A DNA stretch of 63,513 bases, filler included, from Platydemus manokwari (lineage: Eukaryota): assembly GCA_037951405.1 (NCBI GenBank). It is 5 parts of 5 records of this genome, joined end to end, with 100 filler letters (N's around TTAATTAATTAA, not from the genome) between each part and the next. Parts side by side here need not be neighbours in the genome. Positions count along the whole stretch, not along the records: positions 17,379 to 28,093 come from JBBMOY011110775.1; 4 more parts are not named here. The stretch is one strand, 5' to 3'. Positions 25,190 to 28,093 of the stretch are shown here, piece by piece (positions within the stretch are counted from its first letter, which is position 1; the number at the start of each line of letters is the position of its first letter). The notes beneath the pieces were generated by a model. That model was not told where the DNA came from and ran no database searches. It saw nothing but the letters and a program-made list of their open reading frames with translations. The position numbers and the translations under genes were made by a program.

Positions 25190-27604
25190 TCACCAATTTT
25201 CATCAAATTCCTCTTGCTTATATGCTTCATCAGAAACCTTTATAGGACTAACACATTGACGGTTGTCCAAATTTATAATAGATTCTCTAGTTTCGCTTTC
25301 TGTTTCAGTATCTGTCAAACGCAAATCATCTCTAAGCCTGCTTAAGTCAATATCACTTGTAAATGATTGTTGAGGTGCTTTTGATGACATAATGCTGCAT
25401 ACAGTTGGTTGAGGATCCGTACTGGTCTCTGTTTCAGTATCTGTCAATCTCAAATCTTCTGCAATCATACTCAAATCAATATATGGGCCATGAGCCTGAT
25501 CTATAGATAGTTTGTTTGTCGATTTTAGTTCTTCTGAGACTTGATCAACCATTGAATGACTCTGAAGAGAGCAGGAATTTGGCTGAGGATCAATACTACT
25601 GTCTGTTTCCGTATCTGTCAATTTTAAATCATCTCTCAGTTGGCTTAAATCGATATCTTTTGAAGTGGAAATTTTCGATGATGACGAAGTGCTCGTTGAT
25701 GTAGATGAGCTTTTACTTATTTCAGAATCGCTTATGGTAAAATTATCTGTTTTCCAATCTGTTTGGACAATTTGAATGTTACTATCCTGGACAACCATCT
25801 CACTAGAACCAATTTCCATATCACAAGGCGTGGTTGATATATTTTCAGTAGCCACTTCCGGATCATAGCTTAAAGCATTTAGAGTGTCAACGTTTTCACT
25901 TTGTTCACAAGCTTCAGAGTCAATTTCTTGTTCCTGTATATCATTTAATATATTTTCTTCTGTCAAATAATTTATGTAGTCTTTTTTGTCACTCACATCA
26001 ATGTCTTGCAATTGTATATTGTCACCTAAACCAATTATTTTGGGTTGTAAATTACAAATATCCTTAGATTCATCTTCACTTGAAGATTGAAGATCTCTTA
26101 ATATACTTAAATACATCTCTTTCTTTTTTTGTTTTTCTTCAGCGCTTGTTAAAGAAATTTTCATTTCAGGTTTCAATTCGGGTGAAATTGGACATGTTTT
26201 ATCATTCAAAGTGTCATCATTTGACTCATAGTCAGGCTTTTTGTAATCTTCTTGAAGTTTTGGTTCTTCTCGATGTATCGTATATAATCCGCCTCCAGTT
26301 TTTATGATTGGTCTTTCTTTTATATCATAAATAATGTAATTTGAGGGCATTATTGATCCGGTTTTCACTCCAAATTGGGCTTTTGGACCTATTCGTTTAC
26401 CCTCAAGAGGAAAAGGTCTCTTCAATTCATCTGATTTTCTTTTATTCTTCGTCTTTTCTCTGGGACGAGTTACCTTAGATTTCGGCGGTCTTTGTAGTGA
26501 TTTAGTTTTAGAAAACTCTTTTTTGAAATCTTTTGTATCTAATACATCTTCAATACGTCTATCTAAACTTTTCATTTGCACTGATTTTTTAATATCTTCG
26601 CTTTCTAAAGGAGGCATGCAATATTCTTCATCATCATCGTCATCAGACATTTTTAGTTCTTCGGTAATTTTCATTAAGTCAATATCATTAGGAATGCTTT
26701 CAACATTTAATTTATCAATTATTCGTCGTCCAACACAAGATTTTTCACGTTTGATAGTTTGTTTAATTTGAGGTAGTTCGCATGAATCGCATGATGGACC
26801 TGATGGTACAACACATGAGTCATCTATACTAGTGATAGGTGTCATTTTTCTTGTATATTTTCTTTTAGTCTTTGGAGGTTCTTTCTCATGAGAAACGCAT
26901 TCAGAAGTAGATGGTAATACGTCATTCATAGGAGATGTTATTTTAGCCTTTCTAGTATATTGTCGTTTAGGCTTAGAAGGTTCTTTTATCGAAGTCATGT
27001 CAGTGGAAATTATTTCATCAATCAAAGCTTTAGGCTTTCTTGTATATTGTCGCTTAGTTTTCGGTGGCTGTTGGACCGATGGTTGATCGGCAATGTCCTC
27101 ATCAATGTTAGATATTTTAGGCTGTCTAGTATACTGCCGTTTGGGCTTTGAAGGTTCTGTAATTGTAGCTAGATCAGCGGAAGTATCTTCAACATTTAAA
27201 CCTTTAGGTTTTCTGGTATATTGCCGTTTGGGTTTAGGAGGTTCTGGAACTGTAGGTAGGTCGGCAGAACCATCGTCAATACTAGAAACTTTTGGTTTTC
27301 TTGTGCACTGTCGTTTAGGCTTTGACGGTTCTGGAACAGTAGTCATGTCAACAGAACCATCGTCAAGATTAGAAACTTTAGGCTTTCTTGTATACTGTCG
27401 TTTAGGCTTAGGGAGTTCTGGAACAATAGGCAGATCAGCGGAGCCTTCATCAAGATTAGAAACTTTAGGTTTTCTGGTATATTTCCGTTTAGGTTTGGAA
27501 GATTGTGCATTTAGAGGTGTTTCTATATGATCACAATCCTCTACCAACGGACATGATTTACTACTGATAGTTTCAGGCTTTCTTCGACATTGTATTTTTG
27601 ACAT
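25190..27604 (-). CDS. orphan 804-aa low-complexity protein with 8 K(P/T)KR(K/Q)YTRK-type repeats and repeated acidic IDLSxLxDDLxLTDTETE motifs; probably nuclear/chromatin-associated
   Basis: 2.4-kb uninterrupted ORF, first ATG (MSKIQ) at 27604. The repeat units differ at many nucleotides while keeping the frame open and the basic motif intact. Confidence 0.85.
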   Translation of the reverse strand: MSKIQCRRKPETISSKSCPLVEDCDHIETPLNAQSSKPKRKYTRKPKVSNLDEGSADLPIVPELPKPKRQYTRKPKVSNLDDGSVDMTTVPEPSKPKRQCTRKPKVSSIDDGSADLPTVPEPPKPKRQYTRKPKGLNVEDTSADLATITEPSKPKRQYTRQPKISNIDEDIADQPSVQQPPKTKRQYTRKPKALIDEIISTDMTSIKEPSKPKRQYTRKAKITSPMNDVLPSTSECVSHEKEPPKTKRKYTRKMTPITSIDDSCVVPSGPSCDSCELPQIKQTIKREKSCVGRRIIDKLNVESIPNDIDLMKITEELKMSDDDDDEEYCMPPLESEDIKKSVQMKSLDRRIEDVLDTKDFKKEFSKTKSLQRPPKSKVTRPREKTKNKRKSDELKRPFPLEGKRIGPKAQFGVKTGSIMPSNYIIYDIKERPIIKTGGGLYTIHREEPKLQEDYKKPDYESNDDTLNDKTCPISPELKPEMKISLTSAEEKQKKKEMYLSILRDLQSSSEDESKDICNLQPKIIGLGDNIQLQDIDVSDKKDYINYLTEENILNDIQEQEIDSEACEQSENVDTLNALSYDPEVATENISTTPCDMEIGSSEMVVQDSNIQIVQTDWKTDNFTISDSEISKSSSTSTSTSSSSKISTSKDIDLSQLRDDLKLTDTETDSSIDPQPNSCSLQSHSMVDQVSEELKSTNKLSIDQAHGPYIDLSMIAEDLRLTDTETETSTDPQPTVCSIMSSKAPQQSFTSDIDLSRLRDDLRLTDTETESETRESIINLDNRQCVSPIKVSDEAYKQEEFDENW
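26846..27496 (-). repeat. coding tandem repeat, 87 bp / 29 aa unit, 8 basic motifs
   Basis: KPKRQYTRKPKVSNLDDGSVDMTTVPEPS-type units; the seventh unit is 34 aa. Confidence 0.92.
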
Positions 27605-28093
27605 GTTAACCAAACCGAGAATAAATTATCTTATTAAATATCCAATCATTGATTTTATAATTGAAATCAATATATTTATCAATTACAATGGTATTACAAT
27701 TACAATAATGTATTACTTTTTGCTGAGTTAGATAAATTTTAATGGTTTTAAAAACGTTATATTTGATGAAGAATCAATTATAATCAGAATAATTTATAAA
27801 TAAATTGAAAATATTGAAAGAAATCAACTGATAGAAACTTAAAAATTTAATGAAAAATGTTTTCAACAGATTTGACTAAATAACAGAATCACTGATGAAT
27901 AAATTGATGAATGGATTGAAGATATATTTATTAGAACTACTGTATTTGTGTTATGTTATAACCATATGTTTTTAACGTTATTAACATGTAATATGCTGTT
28001 ATTATAATCATTATTACTGTGAGGATTTATTAAAATAATTAAAAATATTTTTATAATGTTATTAAAAAAAAATGTTATAATTAAAATTTTAAT

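What the first reader, a model, noticed from the sequence alone, without database searches (positions are those of the whole stretch)
25190..27604. 804-aa orphan with a basic-repeat array plus several EAF/AFF-like LxDDLxL(S/T)D acidic motifs
Seen: eight KxKR(K/Q)YTRK-type motifs at 29-aa spacing separated by acidic/proline linkers. Later come IDLMKITEELKMSDDDD, IDLSQLRDDLKLTDTETDS, IDLSMIAEDLRLTDTETET and IDLSRLRDDLRLTDTETES. Established (recalled): the EAF1 C-terminus LMNTLRNDLQLSESGSDSDD binds the MED26 N-terminal (TFIIS-N-like) domain, and AFF4 has a similar LEDDLKLSSSEDSD. Inference: a multivalent adaptor that grips DNA or nucleosomes with the basic array and recruits Mediator/elongation factors through repeated CK2-type phosphorylatable motifs.
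Basis: partly seen in the sequence, partly recalled or inferred. Interest (0 to 1): 0.7.

Follow-up and report, generated by a model that had tools for sequence, protein, structure and literature searches.

The report
Orphan disordered protein, two motif arrays
An animal genome holds an intact, intronless gene for an 804-residue disordered protein with no detectable relatives, in which selection has preserved eight copies of a basic peptide and four copies of an acidic peptide resembling a Mediator (MED26)-docking motif; its function is untested.

Summary
The ORF at 25190-27604 on the minus strand encodes 804 aa. It holds eight K[PT]KR[KQ][YC]TR[KQ] motifs, with spacings of 29 aa six times and 34 aa once. 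It also holds four IDLxxΦxx[DE]L[KR]Φ[ST]D motifs with acidic tails.

The gene looks real. It is open against odds of about 1e-27, GC3 matches host non-coding DNA, AATAAA lies about 51 nt past the stop, and an independent assembly is identical.

Pfam, NCBIfam, PHROGs, PDB, the Atlas, a 5.8-billion word search and an exhaustive 1.84-billion HMMER search gave only motif-level hits. AlphaFold2 predicts disorder throughout.

Between copies, synonymous sites are near saturation while the motif cores are conserved: basic core pN 0.09 against linker 0.47, DL core 0.15 against flank 0.62. The duplications are therefore old and both motifs are under selection.

The basic motif recurs in 23 viral loci, about 11 unrelated families, against 0-1 for permuted controls. 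One of those families carries HMG boxes.

The DL motif fits the published MED26-binding consensus LXXDLXLS with T in place of S. It also fits the helix-plus-acidic-linker layout of TND-interacting motifs, and it fits a CRM1 export-signal pattern.

No orthologues or RNA data were reachable.

The parts
25190..27604 (-). Single-exon CDS of 804 aa plus the stop codon. The ATG is at 27604 and the TGA at 25192-25190.
   Evidence: This frame has no internal stop, while the other five frames have 23-116; log10 P(open by chance) is -26.8; GC1 > GC2 > GC3. A Logan contig covers it with no differences.
26804..27514 (-). Array of eight 29-aa units (aa 31-267). Each unit has a basic core K[PT]KR[KQ]YTRKPK and an acidic, proline-containing linker (for example VSNLDDGSADLPTVPEP).
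   Evidence: Core pS 0.65 and pN 0.09; linker pS 0.58 and pN 0.47.
26624..26683 (-). DL motif 1 (aa 308-327): IDLMKITEELKMSD followed by a D/E run.
   Evidence: This is the only DL motif that AlphaFold2 draws as a helix (311-315).
26435..26524 (-). Lys/Arg-rich cluster (aa 361-390, net charge +12), a possible nuclear-localisation or nucleic-acid-binding patch.
   Evidence: charge profile.
26090..26140 (-). The only longer predicted helix (aa 489-505).
   Evidence: pLDDT is about 53 here and below 50 almost everywhere else.
25658..25714 (-). Ser/Thr run (aa 631-649) just before DL motif 2.
25598..25654 (-). DL motif 2 (aa 651-669): IDLSQLRDDLKLTDTETDS.
   Evidence: (family D3).
25424..25480 (-). 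DL motif 3 (aa 709-727): IDLSMIAEDLRLTDTETET.
   Evidence: (family D3).
25295..25351 (-). DL motif 4 (aa 752-770): IDLSRLRDDLRLTDTETES.
   Evidence: (family D3).
25134..25139 (-). AATAAA polyadenylation-signal hexamer about 51 nt downstream of the stop codon.
   Evidence: Read directly from the sequence.

Best explanation
This is a real protein-coding gene that is restricted to its lineage and has resided in an animal genome for a long time. Its product is an intrinsically disordered, multivalent adaptor.

Shown: the ORF is intact. It has no detectable homologues. It is predicted to be disordered. Two different short linear motifs, eight basic and four acidic-amphipathic, are held constant by purifying selection while the sequence between them drifts.

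Inferred: the basic K-P-K-R-x-Y-T-R-K-P-K cores act as small polyanion-binding hooks. Nucleic acid is the most likely target, probably the AT-rich DNA or chromatin of this roughly 26-35% GC genome. Eight hooks at fixed 29-residue spacing would give avidity. Each DL motif would form a short amphipathic helix (I-D-L-x-x-Φ-x-x-a-L-b-Φ) followed by a Thr/Ser/Asp/Glu tail that CK2 could phosphorylate. It would dock onto a partner that has a hydrophobic pocket beside a basic patch. The best-matching known partner class is the TFIIS-N-terminal-type domain of MED26, which binds the DLXLS motif of AF4 and EAF proteins. On this model the protein tethers Mediator or elongation machinery, or another coactivator, to the nucleic acid it coats.
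For: Gene reality.

No relatives.

Disorder: (mean pLDDT 36.6, no residue at or above 70).

Selection on the motifs. The basic core has pN 0.09 against 0.47 in the linker, at pS of about 0.6. The DL core has pN 0.15 against 0.62 in the flank.

The basic motif is a recurrent functional peptide. The exact motif occurs in 12 IMG/VR loci and the relaxed motif in 23 loci from about 11 unrelated ORF families. Order-permuted controls of the same composition give 1 and 0 loci. It is conserved among diverged homologues within those families. One family, represented by two loci, has Pfam HMG_box domains (6e-16 and 1.8e-8). One further ORF has a sub-threshold AT_hook and an HMG-like YABBY match. Several viral carriers show the same layout of a basic motif with acidic or proline spacers.

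The DL motif fits published descriptions: the LXXDLXLS consensus with an adjacent S/D/E motif that binds MED26 (function also), and the TIM layout of helix plus CK2-phosphorylated acidic linker. The acidic tail is conserved in character in all four copies, which a bare export signal would not require.
Against: No copy matches LXXDLXLS exactly, and Ser is replaced by Thr in three copies. The consensus is short enough to occur by chance in tens of proteins per proteome (my own estimate). There is no AF4 or EAF homology. AlphaFold2 run on the single sequence draws a helix in only one of the four motifs. The HMG-box association is guilt by association in viruses and rests on one clear family. Most viral carriers have no known domain, and some are membrane-anchored or of phage origin. 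No expression data exist: the single public run that holds the sequence is not on record as RNA. No orthologues were found.
Confidence: 0.4

Rival explanations
1. Nucleocytoplasmic shuttling protein. The four DL motifs are CRM1-dependent nuclear export signals, and the basic cores and the aa 361-390 cluster are import signals. The protein cycles between the compartments or carries cargo, rather than recruiting transcription machinery.
For: All four DL motifs fit Φ0-x-Φ1-xx-Φ2-xxx-Φ3-x-Φ4, the class 1d export-signal spacing (classification from established knowledge). All five hydrophobic positions are conserved. Acidic surroundings are typical of export signals. The basic clusters resemble import signals.
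Against: The pattern is permissive: shuffled versions of the protein contain 1.4 matches on average. An export signal does not explain the invariant D at position 2, the basic residue at position 11, or the conserved [ST]-D-[TD]-E tail. Eight import and four export signals in one chain would be unusual. The exact basic motif also occurs in contigs of 54-65% G+C, one of whose ORFs matches a phage protein family; an import signal would have no role there.
Confidence: 0.2
2. Generic acidic transcription activator. The DL motifs are ordinary acidic-hydrophobic activation modules of the VP16 type, repeated as in the synthetic activator VP64. They would contact several coactivators (MED15, MED25, TAFs, CBP) non-specifically rather than a TND.
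For: The D-Φ-D-L-x-x-Φ start and the acidic flanks resemble minimal acidic activation modules (my recollection of VP16, not tested here). There are four copies, the C-terminal half of the protein has pI of about 4.1, and the protein ends in an acidic stretch with a terminal Trp.
Against: Activation domains usually tolerate sequence drift, yet specific positions here are held constant, including a basic residue inside the motif. No sequence-specific DNA-binding domain is present.
Confidence: 0.15
3. Nucleolar or RNA-granule scaffold. The alternating basic and acidic blocks drive condensation with RNA or with acidic nucleolar proteins, in the manner of Nopp140 or Treacle. The DL motifs would be phospho-regulated interaction sites within that condensate.
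For: Charge is strictly alternating and blocky within each 29-aa unit. There are CK2-type sites and a Ser/Thr run, and the protein is fully disordered.
Against: No LisH or SRP40_C domain and no Pfam hit at all. The acidic blocks are short and poor in serine compared with Nopp140 (comparison from memory).
Confidence: 0.1
4. Binder of a periodic cytoskeletal lattice, such as a microtubule-associated protein whose basic repeats at fixed spacing contact the acidic tails of tubulin.
For: Seven units keep exactly 29 residues with no insertion or deletion, although synonymous sites are near saturation. This is reminiscent of the repeats of tau or MAP proteins.
Against: No similarity to any MAP repeat. 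The viral co-occurrence points to DNA-binding proteins.
Confidence: 0.05
5. Not a functional host gene: a decaying remnant of a transposon or virus, or an unexpressed ORF.
For: It is intronless and has no homologues. No run that holds the sequence is on record as RNA. The neighbouring orphan ORF is flanked by inverted repeats. The only sequence matches are motif-level hits to virus-like proteins.
Against: An 804-codon open frame has odds of about 1e-27. The contrast in pN between motifs and linkers at equal pS shows selection on the protein. GC3 of 0.23 has equilibrated with the host non-coding GC of 0.255. No terminal repeats flank this ORF.
Confidence: 0.04

Closest known systems
DLXLS motif plus SDE motif of the AF4/FMR2 (AFF) and EAF families, which bind the MED26 N-terminal domain; more broadly, TND-interacting motifs (TIMs)
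   Same: The core is L/I-x-x-D/E-L-x-L/M-S/T, followed directly by an acidic Ser/Thr/Asp/Glu stretch with CK2-type sites. It lies in a disordered region. The layout of a short amphipathic helix followed by an acidic linker matches the published TIM description.
   Different: There is no AF4 or EAF homology and no ALF, EHD or CHD domain. Thr replaces the consensus Ser in three copies. An extra invariant I-D-L lies upstream. There are four copies rather than one. Binding has not been tested.
Basic DNA-binding extensions of HMG-box proteins, and AT-hooks
   Same: These are short Lys/Arg/Pro-rich peptides used in multiple copies. The exact motif lies C-terminal to two HMG boxes, and ahead of an acidic repeat tail, in giant-virus-type ORFs L007 and L011.
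   Different: The G-R-P core that defines an AT-hook is absent. This protein has no HMG box. The motif has an invariant Tyr-Thr pair that neither class is known to have.
Leucine-rich CRM1 nuclear export signal, class 1d
   Same: The hydrophobic spacing Φ-xx-Φ-xxx-Φ-x-Φ with an upstream Φ0 is present in all four DL motifs, in an acidic context.
   Different: Charged positions and an acidic tail are also conserved, which export signals do not need. The pattern has low specificity.
Nopp140 (NOLC1) and Treacle-type alternating acidic/basic repeat proteins
   Same: Disordered, with a repeated basic Lys/Pro block alternating with an acidic block that CK2 could phosphorylate.
   Different: The conserved terminal domains are absent. 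The repeat unit and the motif are unrelated. The acidic blocks are short.
Metagenomic repeat proteins P0001, P0002, P0003 and P0005, and about 11 viral ORF families carrying KPKRKYT(R/K)KPK
   Same: The same 10-11 residue basic motif, often repeated in tandem with acidic or proline-rich spacers.
   Different: No similarity outside the motif. These are different organisms (giant-virus-like and phage-like contigs) and none has a DL motif. This is most likely convergent use of one peptide, not homology.

Membership tests
DLXLS / MED26-binding motif (AF4 and EAF families) | Sequence consensus LXXDLXLS | tested here: inconclusive
   Copies 2 and 4 read LRDDL[KR]LT, which is LxxDLxL with T in place of S. 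Copy 3 reads IAEDLRLT and copy 1 reads ITEELKMS. No copy matches exactly; all four are conservative variants (consensus).
DLXLS / MED26-binding motif (AF4 and EAF families) | Adjacent Ser/Asp/Glu-rich acidic stretch (SDE motif, or the acidic CK2-phosphorylated linker of TIMs) | tested here: met
   The tails are TDTETDS, TDTETET, TDTETES and SDDDDDEE. [ST]-x-x-[DE] sites are present in every copy (descriptions).
DLXLS / MED26-binding motif (AF4 and EAF families) | Homology to the AF4/FMR2 or EAF protein families | tested here: not met
   No Pfam family at E of 1 or below. The exhaustive HMMER search returns no AFF or EAF protein.
DLXLS / MED26-binding motif (AF4 and EAF families) | Physical binding to the MED26 N-terminal (TFIIS-N-like) domain | not testable with these tools
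TND-interacting motif (TIM) | Obligate short alpha-helix that presents aliphatic side chains | tested here: inconclusive
   AlphaFold2 on the single sequence draws a helix only at aa 311-315, in copy 1, at low confidence. Hydrophobic residues at i, i+3 and i+7 are compatible with a helix in all copies.
AT-hook | Arg-Gly-Arg-Pro core | tested here: not met
   There is no GRP in any of the eight cores, and no Pfam AT_hook hit.
CRM1 nuclear export signal, class 1d | Pattern Φ-xx-Φ-xxx-Φ-x-Φ | tested here: met
   All four DL motifs match. The pattern also occurs 1.4 times per shuffled sequence, so meeting it is weak evidence.
CtBP-binding PxDLS motif | Pro (or Gly) at position 1 of P-[LVI]-D-L-[ST] | tested here: not met
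   The copies read D-I-D-L-S, Y-I-D-L-S, D-I-D-L-S and D-I-D-L-M. The consensus is from memory.
PP2A-B56 docking motif LxxIxE | L-x-x-[IVL]-x-E | tested here: inconclusive
   LMKITE and LSMIAE fit. LSQLRD and LSRLRD have D at the critical Glu position. The consensus is from memory.
Nopp140 / SRP40 | LisH N-terminus and SRP40_C C-terminal domain | tested here: not met
   No Pfam hit.

The most novel reading that the evidence does not exclude
K-P-K-R-K/Q-Y-T-R/K-K-P-K is an autonomous nucleic-acid-binding 'hook' peptide that has not been described before and is distinct from the AT-hook. Animals, giant viruses and phages would have recruited it independently. This animal protein strings eight such hooks to four MED26-type (DLXLS/TIM-like) docking peptides. 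That would make it a natural counterpart of a synthetic multivalent activator: it would coat AT-rich chromatin and concentrate Mediator or elongation factors there, under CK2 control.
Probability: 0.15. Interest if true: 0.7.

Novelty: new variant of a known kind. Interest (0 to 1): 0.45.

Why it matters
If the model holds, it would be a clean natural case of a regulator made only of short linear motifs, with no folded domain and no homologues. It would also extend the MED26/TND docking code beyond the AFF and EAF families.

The basic peptide is of interest on its own. It recurs about twenty-fold above permuted controls in unrelated viral proteins, some of them HMG-box proteins, and a full-text search for the motif strings found no description of it. 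It may therefore be an unrecognised class of small nucleic-acid-binding motif.

If the model fails, the locus is still a well-documented example of selection acting on motifs inside an orphan disordered protein.

Tried and rejected
Family scans. Pfam, NCBIfam and PHROGs gave nothing for the protein.

Homologue searches. The word-index search and the exhaustive HMMER search returned only motif-level hits to virus-like repeat proteins, plus one spurious bacterial Ig-like protein, P0004.

Other protein resources. The ESM Atlas gave no usable hit for the whole protein or for aa 395-804. The exact-sequence contig look-up found nothing on record. PDB sequence searches of the repeat array and of the C-terminal 169 aa found nothing meaningful.

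Related loci. Viral and metagenome contigs hold none. A degenerate DNA pattern for the DL motif found none in metagenomes. In viral contigs it gave eight unrelated hits consistent with chance.

Structure. The AlphaFold2 model is uniformly low-confidence, so no fold search was run.

Paralogy with the neighbouring 337-aa ORF was rejected.

Literature. Full-text searches for the basic motif strings found only a plant DEMETER-like N-terminal segment containing KPKRKY.

Expression. Only one run holds the sequence and it is not on record as RNA.

Host species. It could not be named. The mGluR exon found only two unnamed fragments.

Motif classes considered and rejected on sequence: canonical SUMO-interaction motif, CtBP PxDLS motif and AT-hook.
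Full report
**Observation.** The piece 17379-28093 contains one very long open frame at 25190..27613 on the minus strand. The first ATG is at 27604, in an AACATG context, and gives 804 codons plus a TGA stop at 25192-25190.

A regular-expression scan finds eight K.KR.[YC]TR[KQ] motifs. Their start-to-start spacings are 29 aa six times and 34 aa once. Copy 3 has Cys in place of Tyr, and copy 5 ends in Gln.

Tandem Repeats Finder sees the array as an 87-nt period at 27108-27501. The repeat finder places eight copies in register.

In 2000 shuffles of the protein, the pattern [LIM]xx[DE]Lx[LM][ST] appears 0.026 times on average against 4 observed.

**Is it a gene?**
- The coding frame has no internal stop, while the other five frames of the same stretch have 23 to 116. 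The chance of 804 open codons at this base composition is about 1e-27.
- GC1 > GC2 > GC3 (0.44, 0.39, 0.23). GC3 equals the surrounding non-coding GC of 0.255, so the gene has long been equilibrated to this genome and is not a recent acquisition.
- An AATAAA hexamer lies about 51 nt past the stop.
- A Logan contig of the only public run holding the sequence covers 24900-27841 without a single difference. It may derive from the same sample, so it supports the assembly but is not independent biology.
- No listed run that holds the sequence is on record as RNA, so expression is untested.
- The host is an animal. The co-oriented downstream neighbour at 18607-19161 is the signal-peptide and first ligand-binding exon of a metabotropic glutamate receptor (Pfam ANF_receptor; PDB mGluR3 and mGluR7 at E = 4e-16).

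**Orphan status.** Pfam, NCBIfam and PHROGs give nothing. The word-index search of 5.8 billion proteins returns one hit. The exhaustive HMMER search of 1.84 billion representatives returns four hits, with E-values from 4e-7 to 2e-4. All of them align only to the basic repeat array.

Three of these, plus the word-search hit, are metagenomic repeat proteins that carry EKPKRKYT(R/K)KPK several times. The fourth is a bacterial Ig-like repeat protein and is spurious.

The ESM Atlas, PDB sequences, viral contigs and metagenome contigs add nothing. AlphaFold2 without an alignment gives mean pLDDT 36.6 and no residue at or above 70. Its only helices are at 311-315, 489-505 and 520-523. The protein is best described as intrinsically disordered and without detectable relatives in the databases available here. 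Genomes of close relatives of the host could not be searched.

**Internal evolution as a substitute for orthologues.** The repeat units can be compared with each other. The figures below are pooled Nei-Gojobori proportions over all pairs of units.

| Region | pS | pN |
|---|---|---|
| Basic core, 11 codons | 0.65 | 0.09 |
| Linker, 18 codons | 0.58 | 0.47 |
| DL core, three C-terminal copies, 18 codons | 0.56 | 0.15 |
| DL flank, following 10 codons | 0.68 | 0.62 |

Synonymous sites are near saturation throughout, so the duplications are old and have not been homogenised by gene conversion. The invariant residues use different codons in different copies: AAA/AAG, CGG/CGA/AGA and ACC/ACA/ACT. 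Both motifs are therefore kept by purifying selection on the protein.

The first DL copy, about 340 residues upstream of the other three, shares only 54-57% nucleotide identity with them yet keeps the motif.

Seven units keep exactly 29 residues with no insertion or deletion despite this divergence. This hints that spacing matters as well.

The pairs are not independent and the segments are short. The contrast is robust, but the absolute values are rough.

**What the basic motif may be.** A degenerate DNA pattern for the exact motif finds 12 loci in IMG/VR. A slightly relaxed pattern, PKR[KQ]YTxKPK, finds 23 loci. Two controls with the same residues in a different order find 1 and 0 loci.

By eye, the 23 ORFs fall into about 11 unrelated families from contigs of 30-65% GC. 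Several contigs are labelled as giant-virus bins, and one ORF matches a phage family of unknown function. Within families the motif is conserved while the flanks diverge.

Domain associations among these ORFs:
- Two homologous ORFs, L007:5251-6132(-) and L011:2-1009(-), have Pfam HMG_box domains (6e-16 and 1.8e-8). The motif sits between the boxes and an acidic repeat tail.
- A second family (L005 and L014) has the motif just upstream of a segment that looks HMG-like by eye. For L014, Pfam gives only sub-threshold YABBY and AT_hook matches.
- Other carriers have an N-terminal hydrophobic segment that I read as a membrane anchor, with the motif at the extreme C-terminus.
- Several show the same layout as the window protein: a basic motif repeated with acidic or proline spacers.

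A full-text literature search for the motif strings finds nothing, apart from a KPKRKY segment in the N-terminal region of plant DEMETER-like glycosylases.

My reading is that this is a recurrent, probably convergent, polyanion-binding peptide. Nucleic acid is the most economical target because it is common to animals, giant viruses and phages. This is inference. The motif is not an AT-hook, since it has no GRP core.

**What the DL motif may be.**
[quoted passage not shown] It associates with MED26 and lies next to an SDE motif rich in Ser, Asp and Glu that binds SL1 (PMC8387021; PMC6339877).
- TND-interacting motifs consist of an obligate short helix that inserts aliphatic side chains into a pocket, plus an acidic linker of 8-16 residues rich in D, E, G, S and T that CK2 phosphorylates. 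An FxGF element is optional (PMC9987994).

The four copies here read I-D-L-x-x-[LI]-x-[DE]-[DE]-L-[KR]-[LM]-[ST]-D followed by T/D/E. Two of them are LxxDLxL with T in place of S, and the other two are conservative variants. All four have the acidic, CK2-type tail.

Points against membership of that family:
- No AF4 or EAF homology.
- No exact match to the consensus.
- The consensus is short.
- No binding test was possible.

The same peptides also fit the class 1d CRM1 export-signal spacing at all five hydrophobic positions. That pattern is permissive, occurring 1.4 times per shuffled sequence. It also does not explain the conserved charged positions and acidic tail. Two copies fit the PP2A-B56 LxxIxE pattern and two do not. 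The CtBP PxDLS motif fails at the proline. A viral-contig scan for DD[LF]x[LF]TDTE returns only unrelated hits consistent with chance, so the DL motif, unlike the basic motif, is not a widespread viral peptide.

**Verdict.** The protein is a real, resident, disordered orphan whose only conserved features are two arrays of short linear motifs.

The basic hooks would hold it on nucleic acid or chromatin. The helix-plus-acidic-tail motifs would dock a partner of the MED26/TND type, or another coactivator, in a way that phosphorylation could tune.

The main rival, at about 0.2, is a shuttling protein in which the DL motifs are export signals. Lesser rivals are a generic acidic activator, a nucleolar or condensate scaffold, a binder of a cytoskeletal lattice, and a non-functional ORF.

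I rate it a new variant of a known kind, with moderate interest. The selection signal and the cross-kingdom recurrence of the basic peptide are solid and somewhat surprising. Every functional statement remains inference.

No spliced model was needed.

Noticed in passing
window 20879-21892 (-), with inverted repeats at 20448-20612 and 22801-22934: A second intronless orphan ORF of 337 aa. By eye it has a helix-turn-helix-like N-terminus and 'EQCPLR' repeats. It has no Pfam hit and no homologue. It is bracketed by inverted repeats of about 170-200 nt at 75-78% complementarity, which suggests a foldback or terminal-inverted-repeat mobile element, or an inverted duplication. It is not a paralogue of the 804-aa protein.
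   Followed up: partly
IMG/VR loci L003-L025, for example L007:5251-6132(-), L011:2-1009(-), L015:9131-9670(-), L016:11004-11699(-): The peptide PKR[KQ]YTxKPK occurs in 23 viral loci, about 11 unrelated ORF families. Same-composition permuted controls give 1 and 0 loci. Carriers include HMG-box proteins, proteins that appear by eye to be membrane-anchored with the motif at the very C-terminus, and acidic or proline-rich repeat proteins. No description of this motif was found in the literature search.
   Followed up: partly
window 18607-19161 (-): First coding exon (signal peptide plus the start of the Venus-flytrap ligand-binding domain) of a metabotropic glutamate receptor, most similar to group II/III (Pfam ANF_receptor; PDB mGluR3 and mGluR7 at E = 4e-16). 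This shows the host is an animal.
   Followed up: partly
window 27093-27530 (+): A 145-aa ORF antisense to the basic-repeat array. It repeats with the same 87-nt period and is best explained as a by-product of the repeat lacking stops on the opposite strand, not as a gene.
   Followed up: no
window 19999-20176: A 178-base run of N (assembly gap or masked stretch) between the mGluR exon and the left inverted-repeat arm.
   Followed up: no
window 26804-27514 (-), linker halves of the 29-aa units: The first five or six linkers share a weaker acidic sub-motif of their own, [NS]-[LIV]-[DE]-[DE]-x-S-A-D-[LM]. Each unit is therefore a basic half plus an acidic half. This may be a second binding site or an autoinhibitory partner of the basic core.
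   Followed up: no
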